Part shown: piece by piece, positions 16,301 to 36,570 of the stretch
Layout of the letters: the number at the start of each line of letters is the position of its first letter
How positions within the stretch are numbered: position 1 is the stretch's first letter
Source of the DNA: Mytilus trossulus
Lineage: Eukaryota
DNA: 64,000 nt
Assembly (NCBI RefSeq): GCF_036588685.1
Contig: NC_086386.1
Location: forward strand, 57,350,001-57,414,000
Direction: 5' to 3'
The notes under the pieces: model-generated
Told to the model about the DNA's origin: nothing
Seen by the model: only the letters and a program-made list of their open reading frames with translations
Database searches by the model: none
Made by a program: the position numbers and the translations under genes

Positions 16301-16645
16301 TGTGGTTGTCGTGTTAACAGATCGTCTCTTGGTTTACTTTTTATTAAATCATATTTTTGTGATATTCTTTCCAGTGGATCAGAATAAGGGTTCTCTCCAT
16401 ATTCTGACAGTTTTCTTTGCCGAGAAGCCTTGGAATCATACTGTTCATATGCACTGCTACTCGGAATAGGATTATAACGTTTGTTTTGTCGACCAGCTTC
16501 AGGGTAAGACAGTTTGGAAGTTTGTATTTGTGGATGGTCATTTGTTAATTGCGCTGAAGCTTTTTTGTCCCGATCACTGCTTAGATACTTTCCTTGCTTT
16601 GAAGTTTCTGGTGACTCGTATTTCTTCATATATTGGGAAAATTGA
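10345..16645 (-). CDS. Terminal 6.3-kb exon of a ~2363-aa repetitive, disordered protein with a Cys/His region, C-terminal TM helix and KASH-like tail
   Basis: 2094-codon ORF in AT-rich DNA. Acceptor TTATCGTTATAG|T at 16645 completes the phase-2 codon (AG+T = Ser) in frame. The four exons sum to 7092 nt (2364 codons). TM CLLIASALFILFVSMI, then 33 aa ending PPPCF. Minus-strand AATAAA at 10173-10178. The gene is well supported; the KASH label is tentative. Confidence 0.9.
13215..15065 (-). repeat. Three coding tandem repeats of 612-615 nt (204-205 aa)
   Basis: CTATTGGCTTGTAT at 13425, 14040 and 14652; LRQAQKSKEQRRDIVPKDPSRDIMLTSPQK is identical in two units. Confidence 0.9.
15100..16520 (-). 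repeat. Further coding repeats: 234-nt pair, 54-nt exact tandem, diverged ~615-nt pair
   Basis: RYNPIPSSSAYEQYDSK...KPRDDLLTRQ x2 (period 234); QRKLSDNGEYTYSNPIDK x2; EEEIVQKILDA / EDEIVQNILDA at 15151 vs 15766. Confidence 0.85.
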
Positions 16646-16757
16646 CTATAACGATAATTAAAGTCATGAACGAAATTTTAAAAATTACAATGAATACTTA
16701 AGTTTTCTAAAGGCATTAGAATGACAAAAACAAAGAGAAATAAAAGGACGCCATAAC

Positions 16758-17083
16758 TATGGTGGACGGATGCGGCCATTTCGCGTTTTCGCGTTTTCTC
16801 CTTTCACTTCAACGAAATCGAGAAATCGGGAAATCGAGAAATCAAGAAATCGAGAAATCATAATCGAGGAATCGAAATATCGTGAATTGCAGGATTCTGA
16901 ATACCAGGAAATTAAAAAAAGCAAGAAAGCAAGAAAACGGGAAAATTTGATATCTCGATTTTGATGACTCCATTTCGATTTCACGTTTTCCCGATTTTTC
17001 GATTTCTCGATTTCGCTTTTGCAAAGTGAAAGGAGAAATCACGAAATCGCAAAAAGGTGAAATTGCCGCATCCGGCCAACATA
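16758..17083. mobile_element. Intronic MITE, IS3EU-like
   Basis: TIR TATGGTGGACGGATGCGGCCATTTC / GAAATTGCCGCATCCGGCCAACATA; near-perfect 6-bp TSD CATAAC/CATGAC; internal GAAATC(G) repeats. Confidence 0.65.
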
Positions 17084-17671
17084 CATGACCGATTTCTAGC
17101 TATAGAGAATAGGCATAACACTCCTTGCTTATGTTTTATAAAATATAAATGCTACTATTATATAACGAGCAAAAAAATAATAAGAAAAAATAAGCACACA
17201 ACACCAAACGTATATAATGAAAACTGTATTCAATTCGTTATTTATAAATCAAGATTAAGTTAGGAGCTTTATTTATAATAATTCATTCAAATATTGAATA
17301 AGAAATGATACGCCATTAAAAGATTAAAAGGAATTGCTCATGATAAAGAAGACTAGATCAGGACTAGTGTACACTAATAGACATGCAATGTACTTGTTGA
17401 ACCGTCTTGAATTCCAGCCTTTATTATACACTTTCAGTCATAGATATGGAGAAATTCCTAATAGACTTTCTGTATATACTATCAGACATATTAATAATTT
17501 GCTTTTTTTTGTAATTTTTATTTAGGTTTTTCTTCTGGTAAAAGGGAGGTAACCCAATCATGTTTCATCAACCTAAAAAATCCCGAAGAATGTAGGCGAA
17601 TGATTTTTAATAGATCGGCTTCTACGTGTATGTCCACTGACCGTTTCGGAAAATAGAGAGAGACAACTGAC

Positions 17672-17805
17672 CTGTTATCTTTTTGAGTGTTATATTTTCT
17701 GTCGCTTTCTTTTAGATTTGAGCTGTCGTACTTCCTTGCAGCTTGAGTTAAACTCCTTGGGCTTAATTTGTCTGCAGACCACATGTTCTCGCCAGAACTT
17801 ATAAC
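17672..17805 (-). CDS. Exon 3 of giant KASH-like protein
   Basis: Acceptor GCGTTTCAG|GTT, donor AACAG|GTCAGT; 134 nt, phase 0->2. Confidence 0.75.
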
Positions 17806-18760
17806 CTGAAACGCATACATTTAATTGTGTTCATTATTGAGGTAAATAATCTTATAAGAGTATACCATTTTTAATCTAAATAGTACAGAGACAGTTGGAA
17901 ATAATGTATCCCCTGGTACACTGCTAAAGATCACTGAGCTTATTTACAAAACATCCATTACATAATAAACAGTGCCATAAACATGTAAAAGTCTGTTAAC
18001 ATTTTATGCGGCATTTACATTCTTTACGATAAACGTTGCGATAACGGAAGATCTGGTTGGGATTTCAAAATAAAGAATAGTGGATTGGATCAAGGATGAA
18101 GAAAACGAAAGGTAAAACAAATAACGAAAGGCGAAAAATTGAATGCGCATTAATTTGGCTACTCGATACAAAAAAGACCTAACAGTTACCAGTTACGTTT
18201 AAGAACGGTCAATGCAGTGAGGTTCACATTACGCAATGTAATCTAATATGTTGTTTCCGTTTATTTTTTTGACAGAAATCAGATAGATTGTTTTCTTGTT
18301 TAAATTGTTTCCATTTATATGTCATGTCGTGTCGATGCCTTTTAAAGGAGACTATACAGTATAAAAGAGGGACGGAAGATCTATACCAAAGGGACAGTCA
18401 AACAACAAACTGACAACGCCATGGCTAAAAATGAAAAAAGACAAACAGAAAAAACAATATATATAAGTGTTGTTTATTATAAAAGTCCGTATGGAGACCT
18501 ACAGTTGACTCTAGTATGTAAGTCATTTGGACACTGTTTGATAGTTGTCTCATTGGGTTCATACCACATGTACATCTCTTTATTTTTTTATATAATGTAA
18601 ACGGAGAGCATGATTAAACATAAAACAATCCTTTTTGTCTCACCCCGGCGGCAATCGAACACCAGACCTCTCAGTTTACGCGAAAACCGGTTGAGCTAAA
18701 AAGGGACTTCCTGATTGAATATCTACTTATGAAGGGAAGCAATCCTGTCACCATATTTAC

Positions 18761-18915
18761 CCGAACGTTATATCTGTCAATAATATTTTGAATTATTTCA
18801 GAGAGCTCATCTTGTTTGCCATGAATCAAGCGTTCTTTGTCTTCTTCTGTTAATCCGATATCTTCAGCGTGTTCCGATAGTGTTCGGTACCAGTGCTGTA
18901 AATTTTCTTCTAGAT
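18761..18915 (-). CDS. Exon 2 of giant KASH-like protein (helical)
   Basis: Acceptor TTCTTTGATAG|AT, donor CGG|GTAAAT; 155 nt, phase 1->0; DLEENLQHWYRTLSEHAEDIGLTEEDKERLIHGKQDELSEIIQNIIDRYNVR. Confidence 0.8.
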
Positions 18916-19726
18916 CTATCAAAGAAATTAACGAAAGATTGTACGGCATGCTTATATTATTCTTATATACAAGTAGATATTTTATCATTTTGAATTTTTC
19001 TGTCAATCGTATAAGATAAGATAAGATTTATTTTATTTAAGTGTCACCATCCATTACAATATCAATATAAATATACACATAAAGTCATAAGAACCTAACA
19101 TTTAAGTAAAAGGACCGTCCAGCCGAAAACGACTTATGAGACACTATCATTAAAACAAACATATAATACATGATACATAAAAGGACAGATATACAATCAT
19201 TTACCTTTCGCCGAACGACAAACATGCTTGCCTATTTGCTATGTCCATATACTGTTGGTTATATGCTTTTTATTTGTTCTTTCCCTAAATATGCATGCAA
19301 TATTTGACACGTGTAAACAATTTTGATAACAGCTCTTAAGGAAGCTCGAGGATACAAAAAAAAACAGCAAAAAATAAAACTTTTTTTTATATTTCAAATT
19401 TTATTTACGACACTATTAGTTGTTACTTTATAATAGACATATTTGAATTAAAGAAGATGCAGGAGGATTTGACATGGGTTGCGCATTTCCCAAATCCTTT
19501 TTTTCGTAAAATATTTCGCACTTCCCATTTTTTTCTTCTTTTCCCCAGATCCCAATTTTTTATCCCTTATATCCTAAATCTTTTTTTCAACCCCTGTATC
19601 CCACAAACCACATATATACCAAAAGTGTGTCACACTCGTGTGGGTTACCGTATATGTCAACAACCACCAGTCATGCAGTAACTAAACAATACAGAAAAGA
19701 CAGCTCGTTTATCATTTTAAAAGTAC

Positions 19727-20228
19727 CTGTTATATCGTCTGCCTGGATCTTCTCACTAATTAACTCACGCAATGCTTTTACATATGTACAAATGGCAGAC
19801 AGAGATTTATTTTCCACATATGTTGTTTGCGTCGAATCCTCCGTGAAGCATTTTCTTTCTGGGAATTCTGGATCAAATTGTTCCCGTCTCAATCGCGAAA
19901 TTTGTTGTTCTAAAATCCCGCCAAATTTTTCTCGATTTTCCCTCTGATATTGGAAAAACTGCTCTATCTGTGATTCAATACTTGAAAAAGAATCAACACT
20001 GTCTGAATCTGAATTTGAAATGGTATCAGAATAAGATTGAACAGTTTCTGTGGTACTTTCTTCAACTATATCTGTAGAAACAATCGAAGCTGTCTCTCTA
20101 TCTTCCTCCGTTCTAGGAGTTCTAGGAGAACTATTATAAATGCTATCCTCTTCCCTGGAGTTAAAACCTTCGTCTTCCGTTGTTAAATCTTCTGTAACAC
20201 TATAGTTTGTGAAAATATATTGACTCAT
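19727..20228 (-). CDS. Exon 1 of giant tail-anchored KASH-like protein (acidic Ser/Thr-rich N-terminus plus helical segment)
   Basis: ATG at 20228; donor ACAG|GTACTT; 502 nt, phase 1, joining exon 2 as GAT (…DDIT-D-LEENLQ). Confidence 0.8.
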
Positions 20229-20303
20229 TTGGAGTGATGTTCATGTTCGGCGACATTGGTCCAAAAACAAGATATCGCCGGTATCGTCATTTGTCGATTT
20301 GGC

Positions 20304-20317
20304 GACGTCAGTGACGT
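20304..20317. promoter_or_regulatory. Paired CRE-like (TGACGT) sites ~80 bp upstream of the gene 1 ATG
   Basis: GACGTCAGTGACGT in a locally CpG-rich patch. Confidence 0.35.
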
Positions 20318-21975
20318 TATGCGATTATGACCATAAGGTCATCTGAAACGTTATCTTAGCTAGGCAAGGGAACTTACAGTCTTGCCCCCTCCTCATGCTC
20401 CTCAAGAGGTGGTTACTGGATCATATTTCTTCAGTGATAAGCGAAGATGCTGAAAAGTATGCAAACATGAATACAGCTTTTTTTACTGCTTTGGGTGAAA
20501 AAATATCCATTGTTTAATATCTTCTTTTTACAAAAAAATAAAAATAAAATAAAAAAACGTTTATAAAACACGACCATGAAATAAACTTGACAAACAAGAA
20601 TATTATATTTTTACTCTTTAACGATTTATATGTAAGCTTAGATAAAAAATGAATTTGACTTTATTGTATATTTGATCTATTTTTTTCAATTATCATGTAC
20701 AACCAGAGACATATAATACATGTCATGAAAGCTGAAACAAATAATTCAAATATTTAAACAGTACACTAGTAACCCCAATTTAACTTGATCGGACAAAAAC
20801 GTGTTAACGCTGTTTAAATGAAATTAATCGTCATTTGATAAAGATTGACAAAAATTAAAAATCATTTTTAATTTATTTCAATGCATATCAAATCATTTTA
20901 ATGCCAGTCAAATAACTTCGCTTGCGGTCGTTCAATTTAATTCAAGTTGGTGGTAAGTTACGTCAAACAAATAGGCCACGCCCCCGTTAAACTATTTCAA
21001 ACTGGTATCAATTCGTTTTAAACCGAGTTGCGACCCGAGCTTTTAACAGGTAAATCACTCAAGCAAAACAACATCGATGTATCTTTCGTTTATTTGTTTC
21101 AAACTTTATCGACTTATATATATAAATGCGTGTATTCTTATTAAAGTAATATACTTCACAACTTAAACAAATGAATGATCAATACACGTAACATATAAGG
21201 AATTTAAATAAAAACAATAAAATATTGGTGCACGGTTTAAAAAATTCAAAACTTGTGAATCTGTTAAAAATAAAATAGTTAGATGTTTAACATATTTTTA
21301 ATTTGCCCGAATGCAGTAGATCTTTATCTCACATATTCGTTTCAAAACTTTCTGAGTGCTATGAAAACTTGTGAATGTAAGTAACGTATGGTCCATTGCA
21401 ATGACTTACAAACTTGAGGTATTCCTGTATATTTCCGTTTCTCATTTTCTGTCTTACTATAGTGTACTCGTTAATTAAATATAGACACGGAAATTAAAGT
21501 ATCTTACAAAAATTATTTATTTTTCACATAGTTTAAATCGATGTATCTTATAGTTTCGGTCAACAACAAATATTCCCTAGCTGTATATTGATATATGAAG
21601 TAGCTTGTAATAAAAACAATGTTGTGTTAAATAATAAAATGAATGAACATAATGTTAACATTTGTTGAATTTAATAAACAGTTAAGTCTTGTACAACATT
21701 GCAAATAAAGGAACAGCTCAAAAAAATTTAAAACTGTGTCAAATTGTAATATCGGTCACTGACGCGAAACGGCCGTTAATTGCGGACAAGCATTACATTA
21801 CGGTATTTGTGAATTGTGGTTCCGATTCTGTAAAGCGATTATTGTGCTGTCATTCACCGTGACGTACAAAAAGTCTTGCTATAAATAAAAATATATTCGG
21901 TATATATGAGATAAATTTTAGTCTGCGATAACGATGGGTTGGTTGATTTAAGTTTTACGACCTTGACTTGCTCTA

Positions 21976-22108
21976 AGCTGAGACTACTATAACTGCTAAC
22001 GGTAAAATACGAAACTACGTTAAATTAACGCAGCTAGCTTTTTTGAGTGTAGCCGGTTTAATAGGGAAATCGAGAGTGACCAATCTCTGTGTTATAGTAG
22101 TCTCAGCT
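21976..22108. mobile_element. ~130-bp MITE (possibly Harbinger-like) inserted in the left arm only
   Basis: TIR AGCTGAGACTACTATAAC / GTTATAGTAGTCTCAGCT; the right arm has the empty site (GTCGACTTAGAGCAAG, ~29666); TSD readable as 3, 5 or 7 bp. Confidence 0.85.
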
Positions 22109-22329
22109 CTAAGTCGACATTCTCTTACGTCTAATGTATTTTATTTTCGTTTAGGGCATATTATATAAGTCTACCTACCAAATTGAAATCAACATCAACA
22201 TTATTAAAATAAACAAGAATGGAAAAGAAACAATTATGCACTGTTGCTCTGATATAATTTTTATTAACTATATTTTAGCGGTAATGTCCAAATTAAAAAC
22301 TAATTGTCGTACAAAAAAATAATTTATCG

Positions 22330-22571
22330 AGGTGCTTTCGTTGAAGTTCGCGTTACATATCAAAATGAATGATATTGGTCGGAACGTTTGCAAACTTTCA
22401 ATCCAGGTGTTCTCATCGAGGTCCGCGTTCATTTTTCAATTCAATACACCATATTTCATCTAGGTGCTTTCGTTGAAGTTCGCGTTACATAGTAAAACGA
22501 ATTTCATTGGTCGGAACAATTGCAAACTTTCAATCCAGGTGTTCTTATCGAGGTCCGCGTTCGTGTTTCAA
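22330..22571. repeat. 132-bp tandem modules at the inner end of the foldback arms
   Basis: AGGTGCTTTCGTTGAAGTTCGCGTTACAT at 22330 and 22462; inverted pair at ~29190-29445; diverged copy at 26201-26315. Confidence 0.85.
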
Positions 22572-22901
22572 ATGGCATTAAATAAGTTTGGTTACATGTA
22601 GTAATTTTTTTTTATCAGATTATTTAACCACTTTGTGATTGCAGAACCTGCTGCATTGGCTTGTATGTGTGAACGTTATTCGATAACGTCAGGAACGATA
22701 ACTCGTGGCGTAATGTCAACTTACTGTCAAGACAGACGCTTTTATAGAAAATAAAGGAATATGGAGTAAACGTATACGGAACCAGTAATCGCACACAAAG
22801 TCAATGCTTAACAAAAATACAAATAATTAATGGTCAGCGTTTTTATTCCTATTCATCTTTATATTCCCTAAAGGGTCTTCAACAATGAAAGATTCACTTG
22901 T

Positions 22902-23134
22902 TTAGGGATGACATCAAAAGATCGATGTAGGATAAAAAAAAACTTAAATCAAATAGTTTGGGGGGGGGATCAACTTTGCTGCAAGTTTTGTTAATCTAAA
23001 ATCGATTTTACATATATCCCTATTGGTCAATCAATTTTTACCAAATTAAGTTAAGAGGGGGGGTGTGGAGGTCAGTAAAAAACCTATGTGAATTCAGTTT
23101 TGTATTCTTCATTGAACGTTCGATGTCGTCCCTT
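22902..23134. mobile_element. MITE with GGG termini (PIF/Zator-like) within the foldback cargo
   Basis: TTAGGGATGACATCAAAAGATCGATG / CATTGAACGTTCGATGTCGTCCCTTA imperfect TIRs. Confidence 0.5.
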
Positions 23135-26100
23135 ACCAGAACAACAAAAAAAACACTAGCTAAGAGTACTTAAGTTACTGCCAGCTATAGTTCACACTCC
23201 TACGTTTGAAGTCTTCCTGTCCATCATCCCGCAATCGTTATTTTTGAAGATCATATAAGTGAATGAATAATTCAATTTTCTGCCTCAGGACCTGCGCATA
23301 TATGAAATACTTAACACTGAACATTGAACCTGGTTGTAATTTGCAATTTTTATTTGTAATTTTTCCTCACTAGGTAGGTGAAATTATGTATAACATCAAA
23401 TGTATTGTAAATTGCGAAAATGCATTACGAGCATATTCTATAATTTTAAGTTTGAATTATAAAGAGTTTATTTTTTTTCAAATATTGAATACGCAACAAA
23501 ATCTCTGTAATGTTACCCATGTATTATTTATGTTTATGTTAAAGGCGTTTGATTGGATATTAGTTAAAGGTAGGCGTGGTTTTCGGTAACTTTCCTCCAA
23601 TCAACTGGCCTATTCGACAAACATATGTGCGCTGATGCGTGCAAACTGGCTATTGTAACGGCACATGTCTTACATCAGAATCTATCGTGCGTGACCAATG
23701 TTTATTGTGAAATTTCTTGTCATGTGAGCAAATTATCAGACATACAAGTTCTAAAGGTTACAACTTGAATTTGCTTTTTCAAAGATTATTTTCGGCAGTG
23801 CCCCTGATAAACGATGTAAAGTGTTTAAGAAAAACAAGACTTTAAATGAAGGATGCATATTACCAGAGAATATAATCTGGGACTTTGCCAGATATAATGT
23901 ATGTATTTTATGGCTCGGATATTAACAATAAAATGTTCTGAAAAAATTAAGTGTCCGATAATTTGAATTATCTGATAAAGTTATCTCGATCACTTTCGAC
24001 AAAATATTATTGCATGGATGGTAAACTGCTGATTTTTATTTCTAGACATGGTTTGTGACTGTTATAAGTATAGACAACTATATGCATTCTGGTTTACGTT
24101 TACAAAGAACACACTATACATTTTTCTGAAATATCAATCCTTTTTGGACAGACTTGCTTTTTCCTTGTATTTGTAAAAAATATAAGACGTTTCATTTGAT
24201 TTGAATACTTCAAAAATTGCTTCAAAATACTATAGGCCTGTATTGTTGTTATTTTTTTAGGGTCAATGACTTCCCCCCCCCAAAAAAAAAAAGTAGTAAA
24301 ATAATTGTATATTTGATTTGAATAATTGTTTTAAAACGTAATAGAAATAAAGGTCAGCCAAACCCAAATTCAGCAATAAGGAGTGTCATTCACCGGGTTT
24401 AATTTCTTTTACCGGTTTTGAACTTCTTGTTTTGTTCAATAAATAATAGTAATCTTCTTATCTTGTTCAATAAAAAATAGTAAAATTTACTTTCCATACA
24501 CATGTTTGACTTCCTAAATAACACTAGGAAATAAAATTTGTCACACTTTCGCTTTTGTCGTCTGCTCAAGTTAGTTTAATTTGGTATTGTAATATGCACA
24601 TGATATACTTGTCACTGAACGTTGAACAAACAGTAGCTATCCACCAATCCATCAGTGATTGCGATACTTCTGTTACATACCCGTCATTTTGTCACATATT
24701 TGGTACTATTTTTTGAACAAAGTTCGTGTTGTAAGCCGAATTTGTCCTACATTTGTATTGTTCTTGTCAAGTAATACATTCCTTGAACTGGTTTAAATGT
24801 TTAACTAAATCCTATGATATAAATTTTGTGCATTGGTTTTTTGAAACACAATTTTGTTAATTTGAGCGTGTCAACACTTAGTCTAGTAGTGATTTCGGTT
24901 TGTATGACCATACAACATATTTATATATTAGTATTACAGTAAGTTATTGTTTCATTTTACATGTTTACCATTGATAACATCAAATAAAACGTGTTGCAGG
25001 TTGAACTAAACCATAAAGGAAGGATCTAAAATTTTAACTATGTATGTTTAAACTATTATGAATGCGGAGTGGGGGTATTGCACGATAGCCTCAGTAGTAG
25101 TATGATACTTTGATATCAAATGGACTACAGACTCAGTTAAAAAGTTGCATTTACTACCAATCCATGCACAATAGTAAGATGTATGCTCCTGAGCGTATTA
25201 TGGACAAAGAAAAGGGTTGTGGTGTACTTTTAAATTTTGAACTAAGTATGGTAGAATGGTTGCCATACGCCTTCATATTACAGAAACCACCAGCGTACAC
25301 TACAGCATAATTACGATTTCAGTTGTTATAGTTCACACACAAATCAATTGGGCTAGTTTAATCTCCTGCATGGTTTATTCCATTGACAATCATATTCAAG
25401 AAAATTCATATTCTGTATGAAGCTTGATTGAGCCGTAGATTCACAAAGATACCGATCATAGTTATCTTTTCTTCATTTACATAAATGAATGTCGGGAATT
25501 CGGAATAAGGCAATTATACATGATCCTCAGTTTATATTTATTTTGAAGCATTATCGAACTAATACGACTTACATTTCTCTTTAAAATTTACTTTGAACTA
25601 AATATCTAGTAAATGACTTTACATGGGAATAACTTGGGGTGTATTCATGTATACTAGTATGTAATGATAATAAAAAGAAACCAACAGCACTATTTGACGA
25701 AGACGAAATTAAGGATTGAATTTTAACGTCCAGTGACATATATTACAATGATGTCGAAACAGAACTTGAAATTGACAATAGGTATTCCGTCGCTTTTCCA
25801 AAGAATTCACGCTTAGTTGCGATTTCAAGTGCTATTTTGAAGAGACATGTTTTGTCGAAATGCACATCTGGTGCAAGAAAATTGGTACCGTTAATTGTAT
25901 TACAACTTCGGGTTCGCATTATAGTTATATTTGTACAAAATAACTAACAATTAACAAATTGTGATGATTTCTTTAACTGTTCTTGAACGTTCTAGTTTTA
26001 ATATAAATCTGTGATTTTTCTATATTCGTACTTTCGACGAAGCAAAGCAAGTTCGATCTAGACCTGGACAATTTGATGCATTTAGCAATATTCAATCGTT

Positions 26101-27620
26101 GTACAAATTTATTGTAGAACATGTAGAAAATCCGTCTTTTTCGGATAAAAAAATCTACTTTGTTAACTCGGATCGAAAACTTACAATATAGTTTATCCTA
26201 TTGAAACATGAACGCGGACTACATTGAGAACATCTTGGATTGAAAGATTGCAAATCTACTGACCAATGAAATGCTTTAGATTTAGAACGCAGACCTCAAC
26301 GAGAACACCTAGATGGATAACACACTGTAATCTTTAGACCGTCGAACAGATAGCGATAATTCCAGACTTCTTCTTCTTCTTTTTCTTTTAGTTCAAATAA
26401 GGTGACCATATAGAAGAATACAAAGTCATACTGCCAAGGAATTGTATATTAGGAATTGTATATTACAATCCCTTGATGCTGCTGTACATGCCTGATCGAC
26501 AAAGATTTAATAAAATTGAATTATTCATAAAAATGTGAATACAATTTAAGTGTTTCTATATTAAGATTGTGATTAAAAATATGCATTTTATGTACTTGTT
26601 TTGGTTTGGATTTGTTTATTCAAAGCTCGCGAGAACAGCTGATCTCTTAAGGCCGTAACAGTGGTGGTAGATATTCACAGATTTTTTTACATAAAAACAC
26701 ACTATTACATATTCATGTGACAATAATAATGTGTCTGTTTTTTAAACCAATTTAGAATTGGTGTATATATGTCTCAGCAGATAATAATTCTATGTTAGAT
26801 AAACATAATTATTTGGAATTAAAAGTTGTATAGTTACAATAAGTACATTTTCAAAATCATTTATTTATTTAGGCTTGATGAAGATCTACATGATTTAACG
26901 AATAAATGTAAGAAGATGTGGTGTACTTGCCAATGGATTAGATCACCGTACAGCCTTCAACAACGAGCAAAAACCTAACCGCATAAACGTTTATATCATT
27001 TCCCAAAATTACAAATATGAATTCAAACAATTCAAACAAGAAAACTATCGGCCTGATTGATGTACAGCACTTATAGAAAAATATATACAAAAACGACAAC
27101 CACTGGTCACTGGGGATTCAAACCATGTGTCCCAATCGAAAAATAATTTCGTCAAACAAACGGGAGTTCTTATCTACAGAACAAAACCTGGATCCGCCAT
27201 TGTACAGTCTCCTGGCTAGTATACCTGTAGGATAGTCAAAGATAATGGCGTTAAACAAATAATTTCTTTATTTATGTTTTTATTCCATTCAGATCTTCAA
27301 TTTATCGATTGATTAATAAAAAAACGAAGCAAATATTTTAGTTAATCTACCAGTAATTAAATGTCAGTACGATCTTCTGATAAGATTGTAAGACTATATA
27401 TTGCTATTTGGCTGTGAAATTTGGAGATTTAGTTTTATTGATGCATTAGAAAGCTAAACTTGAAAAAAATCAACCCTAGCTTTATGGAGAGCTAGGCGCT
27501 TATCCTATGTCAGTATATGTGGAACACCGTATGGTATATTTTTTGGTCTAACATTGTAAACAGTTCTGATAGTGAACTATATAGATATATTTATAAACTC
27601 AACGTAGATGGTGGATTTAC

Positions 27621-28015
27621 TTAGCTATAGAAAGTGGAAGAGTTTATGGTATAGCAAGAAATAATAGAATATGTACTTTTTGTAAAAATGATATAGAGGA
27701 TGAGTTTCATTTCATCCTCAAATGTCCACGTTTTCAAGGTTTTAGAACAATTTATATGAAGCAATTTAATTGGAAAAAACCGTCAATGTACAAACTTATT
27801 AAACTGATGAGTACTAATAATGTAAAAGAATTGTGTAATTTAGGTAAATTTACATTTAGATCTTTTGAGCTTAGATCCGAAATGTTAAAATAATGTTTGT
27901 TTATTCTACAACACCTTCTGCTGTCACATAGTCTGTGTTTATGTATGTATTATATGTATTATTGCTGTTGATATAATTGTATACCTATAGTTTATATAGA
28001 CTTTGGTAATAAAGA
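27621..28015 (+). mobile_element. 3' end of a non-LTR retrotransposon (RTEX-like C-terminal CCHC zinc knuckle)
   Basis: Translates as LAIESGRVYGIARNNRICTFCKNDIEDEFHFILKCPRF...LCNLGKF...* (stop ~27893), followed by an AT-rich tail with AATAAA. Confidence 0.8.
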
Positions 28016-30872
28016 TATATACTTTCGATTGGTTGATTTGTATAAAAAATATCTTAAAAAAATATGGATTTTAAAATATTTGGTTAAATCAGAGTAACTA
28101 TAGTTTTAATCCAAACGATTAAACAGATTGTTTTATCATTTTCAGCAGACTTGGAAATCAGAAATGGAATATTCTCCAGAAGTATTATGTTTAAAACTGT
28201 TTAAAGAAAACGCCTCCGGGTGCGGGAATTTCTCGCTACATTGAAGACCTGTTGGTGACCTTCTGCTGTTGTGTTTTTTTATTTTGGTCGGGTTGTTGTC
28301 TCTTTGACACATTCCCTATTTCCATTCTCAATTTTATTTGAATTTAAAGAATATTTAGACGTATTACGTTATAAAGATAAGATAACGTTATGAAGGTTTA
28401 GAACTGAAAATCATCGGTTACCTATAGAAACCGGTAGATGGCGTAGAATTATGAGACAGGAAAGGTACTATGTACTTTGTAACTCTCAAGAGATTGGTTG
28501 ATATATTTCACTATATTCTAAACTGCACAACTCTAACAGAAAGTAGAAGACCTTTTCTTAAACCTAACTATGTAAGCAGAGTAAATGTTTCGAAATTGGG
28601 CACTTTATTTATTTAAAAAAATATTGTGTTTTGAAAATTTTGTGTAAATTAATTTGAATCATATATAAATAAAAGTATGTTCTCAAATCTGATCACCAAT
28701 CGCTCATTCTTGTTGCTCGTTTCAAGTTGTGCAAATTGTCATACGCAAAATCTGTATGTTAATATTAAATGTAAAAATATCTTTCTTTTTACCGTTAACT
28801 TGATTTTATAAGAAAAAAAGAATCTAAATTAAATAATACAATTAATTTTATTTAGTTTTTTGGATTAAATTACCTTAAATTATAGGATGTGAAAAGGTAT
28901 GTAAGTGTAACTTTTTCAAAGTTCAAGTTGATCAATTATTGATTTAAGTGAATAAATCAAATTTATTTTCTCGAGGAATAAATCAAATCAGGAACATATA
29001 TATTGTAAGGTATACTGTTCCCAAATTGAATAGTATACAAATCATAGTAATAATTATTCATCAGCGAAAAGGATAGTATTTGTATTGTGTTTGAAGAATC
29101 GTAAAAGTGTTTTATTTTCTAAATTCTATTTATTCACTCGGACTTCGTAGAGTTTAAAATTATTTTTTTTACCATATCGGACTTCATATTGTGTATTGAA
29201 TTGAATCACGAACGCGGACCTCGATGAGAACACCTGGATTGAAAGTGTTCAAATGTTCCGACCAATGAAATTCATTTTACTATGTAACGCGAACCTCAAC
29301 GAAAGCACCTAGATGAAATATTGTGTATTGAATTGAAAAATGAACGCGGACCTCGATGAGAACACCAGGATTGAAAGTTTGCAAAAGTTCCGACCAATGA
29401 CATTCATTTTGATATGTAACGCGAACTTCAACGAAAGCACCTAAATGAAATATTTTATTTGTACGACAATTAGTTTTTTTAGACATTACCCCTTAAATAT
29501 AGTTAATAAAAAATATATCAAAGCAACAGTGCATGATTGTTTCTTTTCCATTCTTGTTTATTTTAATAATGTTGATGTTGATTTTAATTTTGTAGGTAGA
29601 CTTATATTATATGCCCTGAACGTAAATATACGGTTTTTTTTTAAATGCATTAGACGTAAGAGAATGTCGACTTAGAGCAAGTCAAGGTCGTAAAACTTAA
29701 ATCAACCAACCATTCGTTATCGCAGACTAAAATTGATCTCAAATAAACAGAATATATGTTCATTTATAGCAAGACTTGTTGTAAGTCACGGTGCATGACA
29801 GCACAATAATCCCGCGTCAGCGACCGATATTACAATTTGACACAGTTTTAAAAGTTTATTGAGCTGTTCCTTCATTTACAATGTTGTGTGCAAGACTCAA
29901 CAAATGTCAACATTATGTTCATTAATTTTATTATTTAACACATCATTGTTTTTATTACATATATCAATATGCATCTAGGGAATATTTGTTGTTGACCGAA
30001 ACTATAAGATACATCGATTTAAACTATGTGAAAAATAAATAATTTTTGTAAGTTACTTTAATTTCCGTGTCTATATTTAATCAACGAGTACACTATAGTA
30101 AGACAGAAAATGAGAAAAGGAAATATACAGGAATACCTAAAGTTTCGTAAGACATTGCAATGGACCATACGTTACTTACATGTCACAAGTTTTCATAGCA
30201 CTCAGCGAGTTTTGAAACGAATATGTGAGATAAAGATCTACTGCATTTGGGCAAATCAAAAATATGTTAAACATCTAACTATTTTATTTTTAACAGATTC
30301 ATAAGTTTTGATTTTTTTAAACCGTGCATCAATATTTTATAATTTTTTTATTTACATTCCTTGTATGTTACGTGTATTGGTCATTCATTTGTTTAAATTG
30401 TGAAGTATATTACTTTAATAAGAATACACGCATTTATATATATAATTTTAAGTCGATAAAGTTTGAAACAAATAAACGAAAGATACATCGATGTTGTTTT
30501 GCTTGAGTGATTTACCTGTTAAAAGCTCGGGTCGCAACACGGTTTAAAACGAATTGATACCAGTTTGAAATAGTTTAACGGGGGCGTGGCCTATTTGTTT
30601 GACGTAACTTACCACCAACTTGATTTAAATTGAACGACTGCAAGCGAAGCTATTTGACTGGCATTAAAATGATTTGATATACATTGAAATAAATTAAAAA
30701 TGATTTTTAATTTTTGTCAATCTTTATCAAATGACGATTAATTTCATTTAAACAGCGTTAACACGTTTTTGTCCGATCAAGTTAAATTCGGGTTACTAGT
30801 GGTAATACATGAAAATGCAGTGCTTATTTGTTTTCAAAAGGGGGGTCATCCGAACCCCCTAGCTACGGGTAT

Positions 30873-31030
30873 CAGTGGCGGATCCAGAAGGGGGGTTCCG
30901 GGGTTGCGCACCCCCCCTTTATTTTGGCCGATCAATGCATTTGAATCGGGACATATGTTTTGCACACACACACCCCCCCCTTTGCCCTGGGCTAGCACCC
31001 CCCTTTCGAAAATTCCTGCATCCGCCACTG
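30873..31030. mobile_element. MITE, hAT5-like
   Basis: CAGTGGCGGATCCAG / CTGCATCCGCCACTG with 5-bp TSD GGTAT; same family as 103-255. Confidence 0.8.
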
Positions 31031-31680
31031 GGTATGACATAGTCATAATTAAATAGATGGAGTTTTCTGTGCTTTTGGCATGAGTCCTTTGCGTGTTTTA
31101 TAGAGTTGCTGCATTTTCATGTATCACTGTTTAAATATTTGTTTTATTTGTTTCTTGCATGACATGTTTTATATTCTGCAAAGATAATCCGAAAATATGT
31201 TTTTAATTCAGTTTTGACAATTTATCGTATCTAAATAAAGTTTGATTTACATACTTACTTCATAGTGACGAATTAGAGGCGATCGAGATAAATAGTTCCA
31301 GAGATAGACATATAACAAACGCCGGTATATATATATGTATGTACCTATCAGATCTAAAAATTAAGACCTATCAGATGTAGAGTGTCTGTTCCTATTGGAT
31401 GGATGGGCTTTCATGAGAAAAAATTACCTATCAGATTTGGGCTTTCATGGGAAAAAAAATCTGCAAAGATTGTACCCATCAGAATTTTAAATACAATACC
31501 TGATAATGCATGAAACGAAACTGTCTACATTCCAAAGCACCCCTAAGATCTGACATAGGCATTTTTGTAACCCCTAAAGTAATTATTTTTAATTATTTAC
31601 TGCTGCAAGACCCTCAGAAGATTTTGCGTATAAGTGTACGTGTCAGATGCAAGAAAAACCAAACTGATTTCGCCTCTAGC

Positions 31681-31978: not shown

Positions 31979-32381
31979 ATGGTTCTAATTATGCATCGCT
32001 GTTCCATATTCATAAGATATATTCCAACAAGTTTAAACCCCCAAGGATGCGGCAGACAGATTTCAAATGGGACTTTGACAGATGTACTGTTTAATAGCTA
32101 CGAAGATTTTCAATTGCGTCCATTGAGAGTCGGAGCTTTGTCTTTCGGAAAGCGTTTTGGTGGCTCCGAAGTATTTTCATACATTGAAAACAACAGTAGA
32201 CAGTTTGTTCGAGAAGAGTTTCTCACAGACCAAGATGTAAACCAGAATGCCATCAGTACTTACTCCGTTGATTTTGAGTCAATATTCAGCAAGGGATTTG
32301 ATGCCATCCATGCCTCTATTGTGGATGACAGCAGTCAAAATGATGATGTAAAATTGTTTACAAAATTCCTGGATTCGTTAG
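31979..32381 (+). CDS. Exon 1 of PD-(D/E)XK-like nuclease-fold protein (putative mitochondrial presequence)
   Basis: ATG at 31979 directly preceded by an in-frame TAA; donor TTAG|GTGGGT; 403 nt, phase 1. The start could instead be Met5. Confidence 0.7.
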
Positions 32382-32885
32382 GTGGGTTTTCATAAATCTA
32401 AAGTTATTTAAATGTGTGAAATTATCTCCGGGAGAAAAGGGGGGGGGACTTTTGTTGTTGATTGACAGGGGGTGCCACTGGTGTTCCATTAAGACTGGGA
32501 TAATTTCAGGATTGATTCTTTCAGGATGTGGAAATTCTTTTTTTCTAATTTTCCAGATGTCAGGAATTCCTTTCAGTATTCACCATGTTCACATATATTT
32601 AAGCTTGAAAAATTGACCTAGCTATTCCAACGGCACATCCTATCACCTTGTATAAAGGAAGCCCCACCTCCTGCGAAATTATCATGATTATTAACAGTAA
32701 AAAAAAGGGGAGGGTGGAGGTTGGCATAAAACATTGTTAAAATATATATATATATGTATATGCCCCCCTGGGGACCTAATTTGGAAAATAAAATTTATCT
32801 TATCTTATCTTATCTTATATATAGTTATGTATATTATTATCGTTTAAAATATATTGCATATTGATTGGTTGATGTATATCATGTA

Positions 32886-33098
32886 CTGTAAATTAAGAAA
32901 TTATTGCGAGGTTTTTGTTATTGCGAATAATGCGACAGAGTTCATTGGAGTTGTAAACGCAATAATTAAAACTGGCATTTTGTAATATTTTAACTGAATT
33001 AAGCATGACTTTTCTCAAAACCGTAAAAATTAAAATAAAAAAGTTTAAAATGACAAAATCGCAATAATAAATGCACACAATAATTTCTGAATTTACAG
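32886..33098. mobile_element. Tc1/mariner-like MITE in intron 1 of gene 2
   Basis: TA|CTGTAAATTAAGAAATTATTG ... CAATAATTTCTGAATTTACAG TIRs. Confidence 0.6.
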
Positions 33099-33488
33099 TT
33101 TATGTTTTGCAGTCTCACTATGTATGCTATAAAACAAACATGACAAAGTATATATAAGCGTATGAATGCCCTTTACTACATTTTGTATCAGGCGTCAAAC
33201 AGTCATTTTCACTCTACAGTTAGTAGCAAATTGGTTAAAATTATACAGTGATCTGTCAAAAACTTGTTGTCCTGATTCATCAGTAGTCTCGAGAGTTTGA
33301 GGGATTGTTAAAAATAAAAATGTTTGAGAAAATTAAGGGGGGATTATTTAAGCACTGCCTCAGGGTGCCGGATTTTTCTGCTGTGTAGGAGACTTATTTG
33401 TGGCCTTCAGCTGTTTTCTGCTCTAAGGAATTGGAATGTTGTCTCTGTCATATTCCCTATTTCTATTCTCAAATTTTATAGCATGTAC

Positions 33489-34215
33489 ATTTTTGTCTCG
33501 CCTTGACGGAGTCAAAAAGCGAGACATAGGTATGCTGTTTTCGGCGTCAGCGGCGTCAACAATGTATTAGTTTGTGATTAGCTCAGTTTTATGGGGATCC
33601 AATTGTGGTACGTCAATGATAATTGGTATGCAGATGTATTACCATTGCCACATCTCATTGCCATGGAGATTATTTGGCTCCGCCCCCTCAGTCATGGTCT
33701 ATTGACTTTGAATGGTTTGCTTACTTTACATGTATTAGTTTGTGATTAGGTCAGTTTATGGAGATCCACTTGTGGTACGTCAATGATAATTGGTATGCAG
33801 ATGTATTACCATTGCCACATCTCATTGCCATGGAGATTTTTTGGCTCGGCCCCGTCAGTCATGATCTATTGACTTTGAATGGTTTGCTTACTTTACATGT
33901 ATTACTTTGTGATTAGGTCAGTTTATGGAGATCCACTTGTGGTACATCAATGATAATTGGTATGCAGATGTATTAGCATTGTCACATCTCATTGCCATGG
34001 AGATTATTTGGCTCAGCCCCCTCAGCCATGGTCTATTGACTTTGATTGTTTTATTACATTACATGTACATGTATTAGTTTGTGATTAGGTCAATTTATGG
34101 GGATCCACTTGTGGTAGGTCATTGATATTTGGTTTGCAATTGTATTAGCATTAATTGGCACAATTCATTGCCAAAATTACAAAAAGGCGAGACATATCTC
34201 TGTGATAACAGTTTA
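33489..34215 (+). mobile_element. Helentron-associated non-autonomous element (HINE-like) with ~168-bp internal tandem repeats
   Basis: TTTTGTCTCGCCTT...AAGCGAGACA subterminal IR, (CGGCGT) microsatellite, ~3.5 units (33563, 33731, 33898, 34070), terminal AAGGCGAGACA. Confidence 0.75.
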
Positions 34216-34282
34216 TGGTACATATACTTTTAAAGTTACTTGTATATTATAATAATTCTTCATTTGAATAAAAATAACTTGT

Positions 34283-34619
34283 AACAGGCTATTATTTGAA
34301 CTTGGAATTATTTTTAATTATGGAATTTGCATAATTTCTTGTGCTGGAAAATTTTTAATAAATTCCATGTTTATTCTTTACTCAAATGTTCTGTGCTGCG
34401 CACAACACTTTCTATTACGAATAAGATAGTCATGTAGCACATTTTCAATAGAATGCACTGTGCCGAGCACAACACTATCTATACAAAATACATTGTATGG
34501 AAAGTGTTATGAACCGCTCAAAACATTATAATACCAAATTAAAAGGCATTTATAAAAAAAAAAGAAATTAAGCAAATTCCATAATTAAAAATAATTCCAA
34601 GTTCAAATAATAGCCTGTT
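34283..34619. mobile_element. MITE with ~48-bp perfect TIRs
   Basis: AACAGGCTATTATTTGAACTTGGAATTATTTTTAATTATGGAATTTGC and its reverse complement ending at 34619. Confidence 0.8.
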
Positions 34620-35216
34620 TTGTATAGTTTTGAAGTAGTATAACCCTGACTAGTGGTTGATTTTATTGCTGTCATGGCTGTGTTACATTTGTACATATAT
34701 AAGTTTTTGCATTTATTATTTTGTTCTTAAACAGGGACATTAGTTTACTTGATTGAATTGTTTTTCATTTGACTATTTAGGGTCTTTTATAGATATAGGA
34801 AGATGTGGTGTGAGTGCTAATGAGACAACTCTCCATCCAAGTAACAATTTAAAAACTAAACCATTATAGGTTAAAGTACGGCCTTCAACACGGAGCCTTG
34901 GCTCACACCGAACAACAAGCTATAAAGGGCCCCAAAATTACTAGTGTAAAACCATTCAAACGGGAAAACCAACGGTCTAATGCATCTGACTATGGGGTTA
35001 AATATATGGTCTTTGCTCATTGTTGAAAGCGGTATCTATGGTGACCCATAGTTGTTAATTTCTCATGTTTCTGTGTCTTGGTTTATTTTGAAGAGTTGTC
35101 TCATTGCAAACCCTACCACATCTTTTATATTAAACATGTTAAATGCAAATTATACCACATCTTTTCAGTAAATATGGTAAATGATTGCCTAAATTCAAAG
35201 GGACTACCTTTCTTAA

Positions 35217-35489
35217 GGTGGTACCCAACACTTGCACTAAAATTAATTTGGCTCGTTTAATTTTAATAAAATTTTGACAAAGTATTTACTTTGACCCTTT
35301 AACAAAAATATAAAAATTTCAAAAATTTTGAACCAACCGTTATGTCAGAAAAATTACACTGGTTATATAGCAGTTTGACAAACACTAATTTTGATCATTG
35401 AGAAGCTTTTTATTGCCTTCCCAATGCAATGTAATGAAAACATTCAGCTGATATTACAGAGTTATCTCCCTGTAGTGTTAGGTACCACC
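35217..35489. mobile_element. Kolobok-like MITE (TTAA TSD)
   Basis: TTAA|GGTGGTACCCAACACT ... AGTGTTAGGTACCACC|TTAA. Confidence 0.8.
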
Positions 35490-35872
35490 TTAATTCTCTT
35501 AAACTCACTGTGCTAGGCATTAGAGAAATTGACATCTTAATATTTGTCTGACGAAAAATCTTAAATAATGAATATATATGAATATGGAAGGGATTCAAAG
35601 TGGATATTTTTTTTTCATAAATAAAAATGTATTTGATAATCATTGGCATGATTAGAGGAACAGGTTCTCATGAAGTAAATCTTGGATAATCGGATTTATC
35701 CAATTTTGATAGTTCAATTGTGTAATTTTGATACTCTCACCCATACTCAGACTTAAAAATAAATCAATTGGATATACATGATACATGTATATGATAATCT
35801 ACTTGTACCAATGTACCAATATTAATGCATTTTGTATATTAACCAATAACAATGTATGTATTTGTCTTTCAG

Positions 35873-36094
35873 ATTACCATGAAGGGTGCCTTCTGAATTT
35901 TTTTTCTAGAGAATACCCTAACATATCAGAACCAGAAATGTCAGCAGTGTTTGTTACCCACATTTTATCACATTTAGTTCAGGAGAACAAACTTGGCAAC
36001 ACATGTACTGTTAAAGTCAACTACAAAAATAAACCTGAGCAATGCCCTTGTAATATATGTCAAAGAAAAGTGCATTATGGGAAGACAACATTTG
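35873..36094 (+). CDS. Exon 2 of PD-(D/E)XK-like protein (CPCxxC motif)
   Basis: Acceptor TTTGTCTTTCAG|AT, donor TTTG|GTAAGT; 222 nt, phase 1->1; ...NKPEQCPCNICQRKVHYGKTTFG. Confidence 0.8.
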
Positions 36095-36460
36095 GTAAGT
36101 TGTTTAGTTTGAAATAGTTTGAAATTGTGATTTTCACCAGAGTTGGCAAAGTATTACCCGTCGGGAAAACCTGGGCTGGGCAATACTCAATGAAACAGGC
36201 AATACTGGGCAATATGATTTTTTTAAGCTTATTTCAACATACAATAGTAAAGAGTTGTTGTTGTTTCATAGTATTATAGCTAAATATATACATTTTATAC
36301 AGATAACCATTGAGAGTCATTTCTAGAAGATTATAAATTCAATTTCATTCTCTTCTCCACATAAATTCTATGTAGGAAAAATACAAGATTTGCACATTTT
36401 AGGATTCCTTGTCAATTTCCAAGCATTGTTTCAATAATCTTAACACTTTATTGCAGTGTT

Positions 36461-36570
36461 TATGTGAATTGTAAATTAAATTGCTATATATGTGAATTGT
36501 AAATTAAATTGCTATATATGTGAATTGTAAATTAAATTGCTACATATGTGAATTGTAAATTAAATTGCTA
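36461..36570. repeat. 28-bp tandem repeat x4
   Basis: TATGTGAATTGTAAATTAAATTGCTA(TA) at 36461, 36489, 36517 and 36545. Confidence 0.9.

What the first reader, a model, noticed from the sequence alone, without database searches (positions are those of the whole stretch)
20761..30804. 10-kb CACTA-ended foldback element with 1.6-1.8-kb inverted arms carrying 6.6 kb of captured genomic DNA
Seen: perfect CACTAG...CTAGTG termini, 3-bp GTA TSD, and long arms collinear apart from substitutions, a few indels and one MITE. The arms end internally in 132-bp tandem modules. The core has no transposase but holds unrelated debris (RTEX LINE tail, PIF-like MITE, a common repeat, a hammerhead relic). Known: CMC elements (CACTA/Chapaev3) have CAC termini and 3-bp TSDs but normally short TIRs; kb-long modular TIRs typify Foldback/Galileo elements. 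Inference: this is a Foldback-architecture, Pack-type CMC family able to move multi-kb host DNA, a candidate source of the hemizygous presence/absence variation known in mussel genomes.
Basis: partly seen in the sequence, partly recalled or inferred. Interest (0 to 1): 0.78.

Follow-up and report, generated by a model that had tools for sequence, protein, structure and literature searches.

The report
Giant non-coding long-armed DNA transposon copy
This 10-kb stretch is one shortened copy of a young, recently mobile family of very large, gene-less cut-and-paste DNA transposons with long inverted ends; its middle part belongs to the family and was not picked up from the host.

Summary
Window 20764-30801 begins CACTAG and ends CTAGTG, is flanked by GTA on both sides, and has inverted arms of 1,808 and 1,616 nt (95.3% alike) that end in about two 132-bp modules.

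It is a real mobile element.
- The 12-mer terminus occurs 325 times in the genome, against 34 for the control.
- 44 of 47 inward-facing pairs, 5.1-23.2 kb long, carry identical 3-bp duplications.
- One homologous and three paralogous empty sites read through with a single copy of the 3 bp.

The "Pack-type captured DNA" reading fails.
- All 6 other copies examined carry the same 6.6-kb core at 97-98% identity.
- A core piece lies at about 35 full-length places.
- The window copy is an internal-deletion derivative of forms up to about 19-22 kb.

No copy examined encodes anything. The longest open frame is 109 aa, and none of the 20 longest frames reaches a Pfam cut-off. A sister family shares only the terminal ~500 bp and has a wholly different interior.

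The arm sets lie 0.7-0.9% from their consensus, and near-identical copies sit at unrelated sites, so activity is very recent.

CAC...GTG ends with 3-bp duplications fit the CMC superfamily, but no transposase was linked. The Chapaev3, Foldback and Galileo hallmarks are not met.

The scan's notes held no earlier finding of this family.

The parts
20761..20763 (.). left copy of the 3-bp target-site duplication (GTA)
   Evidence: the modelled empty site aligns through the junction with the other arm of the host inverted repeat
20764..22571 (+). arm A (left long terminal inverted repeat), 1,808 nt including a nested MITE
   Evidence: All 29 other left-end loci match 20764-21977; 27 of them also match the whole of 22106-22571 and 2 match only part of it, at 95-98.5% identity
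20764..21283 (+). terminal module of about 500 bp, conserved in both arms and in both ends of the sister family; likely the cis-acting region for transposition
   Evidence: about 84% identity to the type-2 ends over the first 345-490 nt, with long invariant blocks; starts with CACTAGTAACCC
21978..22105 (.). nested 128-bp MITE private to this copy (ends CTGAGACTACTATAAC, duplication CTCTAAG)
   Evidence: absent from all other left arms; junctions shown
22322..22571 (+). 1.9 tandem copies of the 132-bp module at the inner end of arm A
22572..29185 (+). family-wide non-coding core (not private cargo). Relative to longer copies, the site right after the arm end (22571/22573) lacks about 2.1 kb, and the point 47 nt further in lacks about 6.6 kb
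26185..26315 (-). diverged (76-80%) inverted copy of the 132-bp module inside the core
   Evidence: (I12, I14)
28212..28336 (.). 125-bp insertion private to this copy, a dispersed repeat
   Evidence: absent from L032, L035, L036 and the C15 copy; similar pieces lie in the flanks of L017 and L027
29186..29454 (-). 2.0 tandem copies of the 132-bp module at the inner end of arm B
29186..30801 (-). arm B (right long terminal inverted repeat), 1,616 nt, with a private deletion of about 65 nt
   Evidence: other right ends are 98-100% identical over the last 500 nt
30802..30804 (.). right copy of the 3-bp target-site duplication (GTA)
31108..31178 (-). other arm of the small inverted-repeat host sequence into whose left arm (20706-20763 plus 30805-30821) the element inserted; serves as a built-in empty-site comparison
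   Evidence: (hit at window 31126-31174, minus strand)

Best explanation
Window 20764-30801 is one non-autonomous, internally deleted copy of a family of very large cut-and-paste (class II, TIR) DNA transposons.

Shown:
- The family ('type 1') has about 35-40 copies of 5-22 kb. Each has arm A, a shared non-coding interior and arm B.
- The two arm versions differ by about 4-5% in every copy, so that difference is older than the amplification.
- Copies differ by internal deletions and private nested MITEs.
- Type 1 belongs to a wider group of roughly 145 elements that start with the same 12 bases.
- A sister family ('type 2') shares only the terminal ~500 bp and carries a completely different non-coding interior.
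- Insertion duplicates exactly 3 bp, with no TWA rule and a modest excess of ATG/CAT.
- Empty sites read through precisely.
- Near-identical copies lie at unrelated sites on the same chromosome.

Inferred:
- A transposase supplied in trans binds the ~500-bp terminal module, cuts at CAC/GTG and integrates with a 3-bp stagger.
- That enzyme is most likely a CMC (CACTA/Chapaev-like) DDE transposase, of which the genome holds at least 46 gene pieces.
- The 1.7-kb arms arose in the type-1 founder by inverted duplication of subterminal DNA.
- The deletion derivatives, the window copy among them, arose by faulty gap repair and kept moving.
For: Copy number and ends:
- The left and right terminal 500 bp each give 378/379 candidate places. 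All 40 scored are 97-100% identical.
- CACTAGTAACCC occurs 155+170 times, against 23+11 for the reversed control.

Target duplication:
- Identical 3 bp in 17 of 17 pairs with both ends held.
- Identical 3 bp in 27 of 30 further pairs; 0 of 30 extend to 4 bp.

Empty sites:
- The flanks of the C75 copy map to C13:1942841-1944334 and C13:1944332-1945834, overlapping by 3 bp. The C13 stretch reads ...gaggttaa AGA tctattt....
- Three paralogous empty sites match the pre-insertion site of the C26 copy.
- The window's own modelled empty site aligns through the junction with the other arm of its host inverted repeat.

Shared core:
- L031, L032, L035 and L036 match 22573-29150 at 97-98%, and L033/L034 match further in.
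- The 19,455-bp C15 copy is collinear with the window copy.
- A core piece has about 35 full-length places at 96-98%.

No coding capacity:
- The longest open frames are 98 aa (window), 93 aa (C15 copy) and 109 aa (type 2).
- 20 of 20 longest frames have no Pfam match over cut-off.

Youth:
- Arms are 0.88% (A) and 0.74% (B) from their own consensus. A-A identity is 98.3%, B-B 98.6%, A-B 95.2%.
- L003/L004 are 100% identical over 2,004 nt and L012/L013 99.95% over 2,000 nt, in both cases with unrelated flanks.

Sister family: its ends match each other over about 346 nt and match the type-1 arms over about 345-490 nt at about 84%. Its interior is unrelated but shared by many paired copies.

CMC fit: a passage of PMC4079192 gives 3-4-bp duplications and invariable 5'-CAC...GTG-3' ends as Chapaev hallmarks. 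PF02992 has 46 matches in this genome, with open frames up to 1,015 aa.
Against: - No transposase was linked. None of the 46 PF02992 places lies inside any of the paired elements whose coordinates I had.
- The terminus listing stopped at contig C6 (100 of 325 places shown), so elements on C7 onward are only partly covered.
- Arm A has only one 10-mer that recurs 3 times or more, and arm B has none. So there are no plant-CACTA-style subterminal motif arrays.
- Chapaev3's TWA target is not met (2 of 44).
- 3 of 30 pairs lack matching duplications.
- The arm samples are the 40 best-scoring places, so the divergence figures are biased low.
- No empty allele of the window's own locus was seen in the contigs of 4 public runs. 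Those contigs break at the repeat, so this says little either way.
Confidence: 0.8

Rival explanations
1. One reading: a Pack-type element whose 6.6-kb core is host genomic DNA captured by this copy, in a family whose copies carry different captured cores and so shuttle host DNA.
For: Two families share the ~500-bp ends but have wholly different interiors. So the ends can mobilise unrelated DNA of 5-20 kb, and at some time each interior was acquired.
Against: Within the window's family the core is the same in 6 of 6 other copies examined and at about 35 places. Every one of those places that I could cross-check lies inside a paired element. No open frame over 98 aa and no Pfam match over cut-off exists in the window copy. 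No non-element parent locus appeared among the 40 scored places. Only two interiors were seen, not one per copy.
Confidence: 0.07
2. The same kind of non-autonomous element, but mobilised by a non-CMC transposase that also makes 3-bp duplications (PIF/Harbinger, Zator or Academ, all reported in bivalves).
For: No CMC gene is linked to the ends. Passages of PMC10294476 report Zator and Academ almost exclusively in bivalves among the molluscs studied, and only two CMC consensus sequences in its curated library.
Against: CAC...GTG ends with a 3-bp duplication are the stated Chapaev/CMC hallmark (PMC4079192 passage). The PIF/Harbinger TWA-type target (recalled) does not fit: 2 of 44. The genome holds many intact-looking PF02992 frames, including one 861-aa frame at 10 or more places with equal scores, so an active CMC source is plausible.
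Confidence: 0.2
3. A member of the Foldback or Galileo (MULE- or P-related) long-inverted-repeat elements.
For: The arms are kb-long with tandem modules at the inner ends. Galileo also shows extension of its inverted repeats and chimeric copies without matching duplications (PMC3573991 passages), as seen here in 3 of 30 pairs.
Against: The duplication is 3 bp in 44 of 47 pairs and never 4 bp in the 30 pairs tested for it. Galileo makes 7 bp (PMC3573991) and Foldback-like Tm1 makes 9 bp (PMC3169594). The arms are not built of tandem repeats (one search finds only about 2 modules per arm).
Confidence: 0.02
4. Not a mobile element: an assembly inversion artefact or a local inverted segmental duplication.
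For: None beyond the inverted symmetry itself.
Against: There are dozens of copies on many contigs with sharp common ends and matching duplications, and precise empty sites. In run X1 a 137-nt contig crosses the left junction (20655-20791) with 0 differences, though only 28 of its letters lie in the arm, under the tool's 31-letter rule for bridging.
Confidence: 0.01

Closest known systems
CMC superfamily (CACTA/En-Spm, Mirage, Chapaev), non-autonomous derivatives
   Same: 5'-CAC...GTG-3' ends (here CACTAG...CTAGTG), a 3-bp target duplication, families of internal-deletion derivatives moved in trans, and large element size. That plant CACTA elements of 10-20 kb exist is recalled, not checked.
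   Different: No CMC transposase is tied to these ends. The arms are 1.7 kb rather than short. There are no arrays of short subterminal motifs. The target is not TWA as in Chapaev3 (PMC4079192 passage).
Galileo (P superfamily, Drosophila)
   Same: Very long inverted repeats that vary by recruiting internal sequence and by tandem modules; many two-arm non-autonomous copies; some chimeric copies without matching duplications (PMC3573991 passages).
   Different: Galileo makes 7-bp duplications and has copies with a P-type transposase. Here the duplication is 3 bp and no coding copy was found.
Foldback elements and Tm1 (Mutator/Foldback)
   Same: Long inverted arms, and non-coding copies.
   Different: Foldback-type arms are built of short tandem repeats and the duplication is 9 bp (PMC3169594 passages). 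Here the arms are mostly unique sequence and the duplication is 3 bp.
Pack-MULE / Pack-CACTA type gene-capturing elements (recalled from plant literature)
   Same: Transposon ends around non-transposase DNA. Two sister families here carry unrelated interiors.
   Different: There are no host gene fragments, and the interior is constant within a family rather than differing from copy to copy.
piggyBac 'Kenshin' family
   Same: Its inverted repeat is listed as CACTAGA (Table 1 of PMC4298943, seen as a passage), almost the same first bases as here.
   Different: piggyBac inserts at TTAA with a 4-bp duplication (recalled). Here the duplications are 3 bp of varied sequence, and 0 of 30 extend to 4 bp.

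Membership tests
CMC (CACTA-Mirage-Chapaev) superfamily | Element ends 5'-CAC ... GTG-3' | tested here: met
   CACTAG...CTAGTG in the window; the same ends at all 60 loci ends and all 60 ends of 30 further pairs. Hallmark as stated in a passage of PMC4079192.
CMC (CACTA-Mirage-Chapaev) superfamily | Target-site duplication of 2-4 bp (3 bp for CACTA, 3-4 bp for Chapaev) | tested here: met
   Identical 3 bp in 17 of 17 and 27 of 30 pairs, with 0 of 30 extending to 4 bp; four empty sites show one copy.
CMC (CACTA-Mirage-Chapaev) superfamily | An autonomous relative with the same ends encodes a CMC-type DDE transposase (Pfam Transposase_21, PF02992) | tested here: inconclusive
   PF02992 gives 46 places in the genome, none inside a paired element whose coordinates were available (terminus listing complete only for C1-C6).
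Chapaev3 subgroup | TWA target duplication, inserted between A and T | tested here: not met
   TAA/TTA in 2 of 44 duplications; ATG/CAT is commonest at 8 of 44. Feature from a passage of PMC4079192.
Plant-type CACTA (En/Spm) | Arrays of short subterminal repeats (transposase-binding motifs); recalled feature | tested here: not met
   Only one 10-mer recurs 3 times or more in arm A and none in arm B. Shorter or degenerate motifs were not searched.
Foldback / Tm1 | 9-bp duplication and arms built of short tandem repeats | tested here: not met
   3-bp duplication; only about 2 copies of a 132-bp module per arm. Features from passages of PMC3169594.
Galileo (P superfamily) | 7-bp duplication; P-type transposase in complete copies | tested here: not met
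   3-bp duplication; no coding copy. Feature from passages of PMC3573991.
Pack-type (gene-capturing) elements | Interior made of captured host gene fragments that differ between copies | tested here: not met
   The core is shared by 6 of 6 other copies and lies at about 35 places. The 10 longest frames of the window copy have no Pfam match over cut-off.
PIF/Harbinger | 3-bp duplication, usually TWA (recalled) | tested here: not met
   The length fits, but TWA is 2 of 44. No search with a PIF transposase family was run.
Non-autonomous class II TIR transposon (general) | Inverted ends, target duplication, empty sites, multiple copies, no transposase | tested here: met

The most novel reading that the evidence does not exclude
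An active group of giant (10-23 kb), entirely non-coding DNA transposons needs only a ~500-bp terminal module to move and hops locally. It is driven by a CMC transposase that may itself be a dispensable gene. In this reading the group is a measurable source of the >10-kb hemizygous blocks of mussel genomes, and its ends can carry any interior. That would make it a natural large-cargo vector in a mollusc.
Probability: 0.15. Interest if true: 0.6.

Novelty: new member of a known kind. Interest (0 to 1): 0.4.

Why it matters
The role of transposons in the hemizygous presence/absence variation of mussels is stated as open (passages of PMC7653742 and of bioRxiv 10.1101/2020.09.15.298695).

What this family offers:
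- It is a concrete, very young family whose single insertions add 5-23 kb.
- One copy is present on one contig and precisely absent from the homologous site on another contig of the same assembly.
- Its sharp ends make it easy to genotype.

What limits it:
- The elements carry no genes, so they explain sequence presence/absence, not gene presence/absence.
- The whole group amounts to only about 2 Mb. That figure is my inference from about 145 elements of about 15 kb, roughly 0.17% of 1.30 Gb.

For transposon biology, the point of interest is that non-coding elements this large still move efficiently. A 1.7-kb arm evolved from a ~500-bp end module.

Tried and rejected
- Transposase in long copies. 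I assembled the 19,455-bp C15 copy and covered one 17.3-kb type-2 structure; its middle stretch was read from the collinear stretch L068 of the ~23-kb C5 copy and mapped onto it. Nothing over 109 aa was found, and Pfam found nothing over cut-off in 20 frames. A gene made of many exons under 60 aa is not strictly excluded.
- Link to CMC genes. I compared the 46 PF02992 places with the element coordinates and found no overlap.
- Hammerhead or other RNA: Rfam at E<=1 gave 0 matches.
- Empty allele of the window locus in public runs. Logan contigs of 4 runs break near the junction. No contig reading flank-GTA-flank appeared among the rows shown, and 60 loose ends were not shown. The 11 loose letters of run X2 after 20696 do not occur in the window.
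- No second copy of the window's left flank exists in the assembly, so there is no haplotig to compare for this locus.
- Relatives outside the genome: the degenerate 25-nt end pattern gave 0 matches in metagenome contigs and 0 in viral contigs.
- Literature. Searches found no description of this family. Repbase and Dfam could not be searched, and the supplements of PMC10294476 (its curated bivalve library) were not seen, so 'undescribed' is not established.
- Earlier notes of the scan: the word search found no note holding all the words, and ended in an error because the word is met in no finding. One note on a different element with a 9-bp duplication was listed.
- Two lengths printed are 10 too long because I mistyped two start coordinates. 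The true values are 22,987 and 13,983. The duplication results are unaffected.

Full report
**1. Observation**

The sequence reads ...AAACA GTA CACTAGTAACCCC... at 20756-20775 and ...GGGTTACTAGTG GTA ATACATG... at 30790-30811.

One search finds a collinear chain of inverted-repeat blocks between 20764-22571 and 29186-30801. A global alignment gives 1,808 against 1,616 nt, 95.3% identity over 1,573 aligned pairs, and 14 indels. Tandem Repeats Finder gives about two 132-bp units at the inner end of each arm. The element is AT-rich (GC 0.24-0.35).

By the notes of this scan the element lies between two gene models at 10345-20228 and 31979-38156. I did not check those notes.

**2. It is one copy of a family**

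The terminal 500 bp of each arm gives 378 or 379 candidate places in the window's own 1.30-Gb genome. The 40 scored in each search are all 97-100% identical.

The 12-nt end CACTAGTAACCC occurs 155 times forward and 170 times reverse, against 23 and 11 for the reversed control. Of the 100 places listed (contigs C1-C6), most form inward-facing pairs 5-26 kb apart.

All 29 other left-end loci match the window's arm A from exactly 20764 through 21977. 27 of them match on to the arm end at 22571 and 2 match only part of 22106-22571; all skip 21978-22105. That gap confirms a private nested MITE, whose ends and CTCTAAG duplication are shown.

**3. Target duplications and empty sites**

- Among the loci elements had both ends in hand, and 17 of 17 have identical 3 bp on both sides.
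- For 30 further pairs I fetched 22 nt at each end. 27 of 30 have identical 3 bp and 0 of 30 extend to 4 bp. Chance would give about 1 match in 64.
- The three misses may be chimeric copies or neighbouring elements. Galileo shows the same kind of exception (passage of PMC3573991).

Empty sites:

- The two 1.5-kb flanks of the 12,046-bp copy on contig C75 match C13:1942841-1944334 (96%) and C13:1944332-1945834 (98%). On C13 they therefore abut with a 3-bp overlap. The fetched 61 nt read ...gaggttaa AGA tctattt..., the exact site without the element.
- The copy on C26 lies inside another repeat. Three paralogous copies of that repeat read straight through with one AGT.
- The window's own element sits in one arm of a small inverted-repeat sequence. 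Left flank plus one GTA plus right flank aligns without a break to the other arm, 31108-31178 reversed.

These results exclude an assembly artefact and show precise insertion with a 3-bp stagger.

**4. The core is not captured DNA**

Six other copies were fetched over 10 kb.

- Four carry the window's 22573-29150 at 97-98% identity.
- In the other two the core lies further in. The fully covered 19,455-bp copy on C15 is collinear with the window copy throughout.
- A 1.2-kb core piece has about 35 full-length places at 96-98%. Every one that I could cross-check lies inside a paired element.

Compared with longer copies, the window copy lacks about 2.1 kb directly after arm A and a further 6.6 kb that C15 and L034 carry 47 nt further in. 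It has two private insertions, at 21978-22105 and 28212-28336, and a private deletion of about 65 nt in arm B.

Among the 17 type-1 elements with both ends, lengths run from 5,178 to 21,725 bp with a median of 15,987. The window copy is the second shortest.

**5. No coding capacity anywhere examined**

| Sequence | Longest stop-to-stop frame |
|---|---|
| Window copy | 98 aa |
| C15 copy | 93 aa |
| Type-2 sequences | 109 aa |

The 20 longest frames have no Pfam match over cut-off; the best E-value is 0.01. Rfam finds nothing at E<=1 in 20000-31500, so the 'hammerhead relic' is not supported.

**6. A sister family with other contents**

The ~23-kb element C5:75061252-75084238 has the duplication GTT. 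Beside its arm lie 10 kb with no likeness to the type-1 interior.

That interior is shared at 85-97% by many other paired elements. In one 17.3-kb copy the two ends match each other over only about 346 nt (88%). They match the type-1 arms over the first 345-490 nt at about 84%. The four-way alignment shows long invariant blocks across the first ~500 nt.

I infer two things from this:

- This ~500-nt module is what the transposase needs.
- The 1.7-kb arms of type 1 are a later extension by inverted duplication.

**7. Age and activity**

Over the first 1,200 nt, 30 A arms are on average 98.3% alike, 30 B arms 98.6%, and A against B 95.2%. The mean distance to the group's own consensus is 0.88% for A and 0.74% for B. 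These are the best-scoring places, so the figures are biased low.

The A/B difference is thus inherited from the founder and does not date any single copy.

Two pairs of copies on one chromosome are 100% (2,004 nt) and 99.95% (2,000 nt) identical, yet have unrelated flanks. Two type-2 copies 80 kb apart have the same length and different duplications. These patterns point to very recent, partly local transposition of already deleted derivatives.

In the contigs of four public runs labelled as three organisms and one mollusc metagenome, the arm is covered hundreds of times deeper than the flank. Many contigs begin exactly at 20762-20764 with unlike flanks. The tool warns that depth is no copy number.

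**8. The window locus in other animals**

In run X1 a 137-nt contig spans 20655-20791 without a difference. That is 28 letters into the arm, just under the tool's 31-letter rule. No contig joining the two flanks was listed. Short-read contigs end at the repeat, so presence/absence at this locus remains untested.

**9. Which superfamily**

CAC...GTG ends and 3-4-bp duplications are given as Chapaev hallmarks within the CMC group (passage of PMC4079192). The same paper reports TWA duplications for all Chapaev3 elements it examined. Here TWA is 2 of 44, and ATG/CAT is 8 of 44 against 4% background, so Chapaev3 does not fit.

The genome has 46 PF02992 (Transposase_21) places with open frames up to 1,015 aa, including an 861-aa frame at 10 or more places with equal scores. 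None lies within a paired element whose coordinates I had, and I could not read their ends.

Foldback-like Tm1 (9 bp) and Galileo (7 bp) are excluded by the duplication length (passages of PMC3169594 and PMC3573991). CMC is therefore the best inference, at about 0.6, and is not shown.

**10. Novelty and verdict**

Five literature searches found no description of such a family in mussels. A bivalve survey lists CMC among the superfamilies present in all analysed mollusc genomes and includes two CMC consensus sequences in its curated library (passages of PMC10294476). Repbase, Dfam and that paper's supplements were not seen.

I file it as a new member of a known kind: a non-autonomous TIR DNA transposon family. 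It is unusual for its size, its long arms and its recent activity.

Noticed in passing
G000 C75:708083-720128 versus C13:1944303-1944363 (L002, L053, L132): A 12,046-bp copy of the family is present on contig C75 and precisely absent from the 96-98% identical site on C13, which has one AGA. C75 may be an alternative haplotig, which would make this a hemizygous insertion, or it may be a recent duplicate.
   Followed up: partly
window 20706-20763 plus 30805-30821, and 31108-31178: The element inserted into the left arm of a small (about 420 bp without the element) inverted-repeat, MITE-like sequence. That sequence is nearly unique in the genome: the left flank has only 3 matches.
   Followed up: partly
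window 21978-22105: A private 128-bp MITE nested in arm A, with ends CTGAGACTACTATAAC and a CTCTAAG duplication. It is absent from all 29 other left arms.
   Followed up: yes
window 28212-28336: A private 125-bp insertion in the core.
   Followed up: partly
window 31342-31678: A high-copy repeat of about 320 bp in the right flank: 2,746 candidate places, with the 40 scored 82-86% alike.
   Followed up: no
G000 C1:66776238-66784265: Four copies of the element's 12-nt end on the same strand, spaced exactly 2,672 bp apart. This is a tandem array that contains an element end.
   Followed up: no
G000, for example C5:75061252-75084238 and C1:22644230-22661531 (L068, L129-L131): A sister family ('type 2') has the same first ~500 bp, inverted repeats of only about 346 bp and an unrelated non-coding interior. 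It has many copies at 85-97% identity, so it is older or more diverse than the window's family.
   Followed up: partly
G000, 46 places listed (for example C10:28475737-28476198): There are many PF02992 (CMC-type) transposase pieces with long open frames. One 861-aa frame recurs at 10 or more places with identical scores, which suggests a recently active autonomous CMC family.
   Followed up: no
G000 C1:16694912/16709641, C5:5244719/5259062, C6:16190688/16217037: Three inward-facing end pairs lack matching 3-bp duplications. They may be chimeric copies from recombination between elements, or two separate elements.
   Followed up: no
window 20833-20893: A short internal palindrome of about 61 nt (80-85% self-complementary) inside the terminal module. 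It is present in every copy scored.
   Followed up: no
L033/L067 (C15 copy), element positions 10800-11013 and 15232-15901: Two further nested short inverted-repeat elements (214 bp and 670 bp) are present in the C15 copy but not in the window copy.
   Followed up: partly
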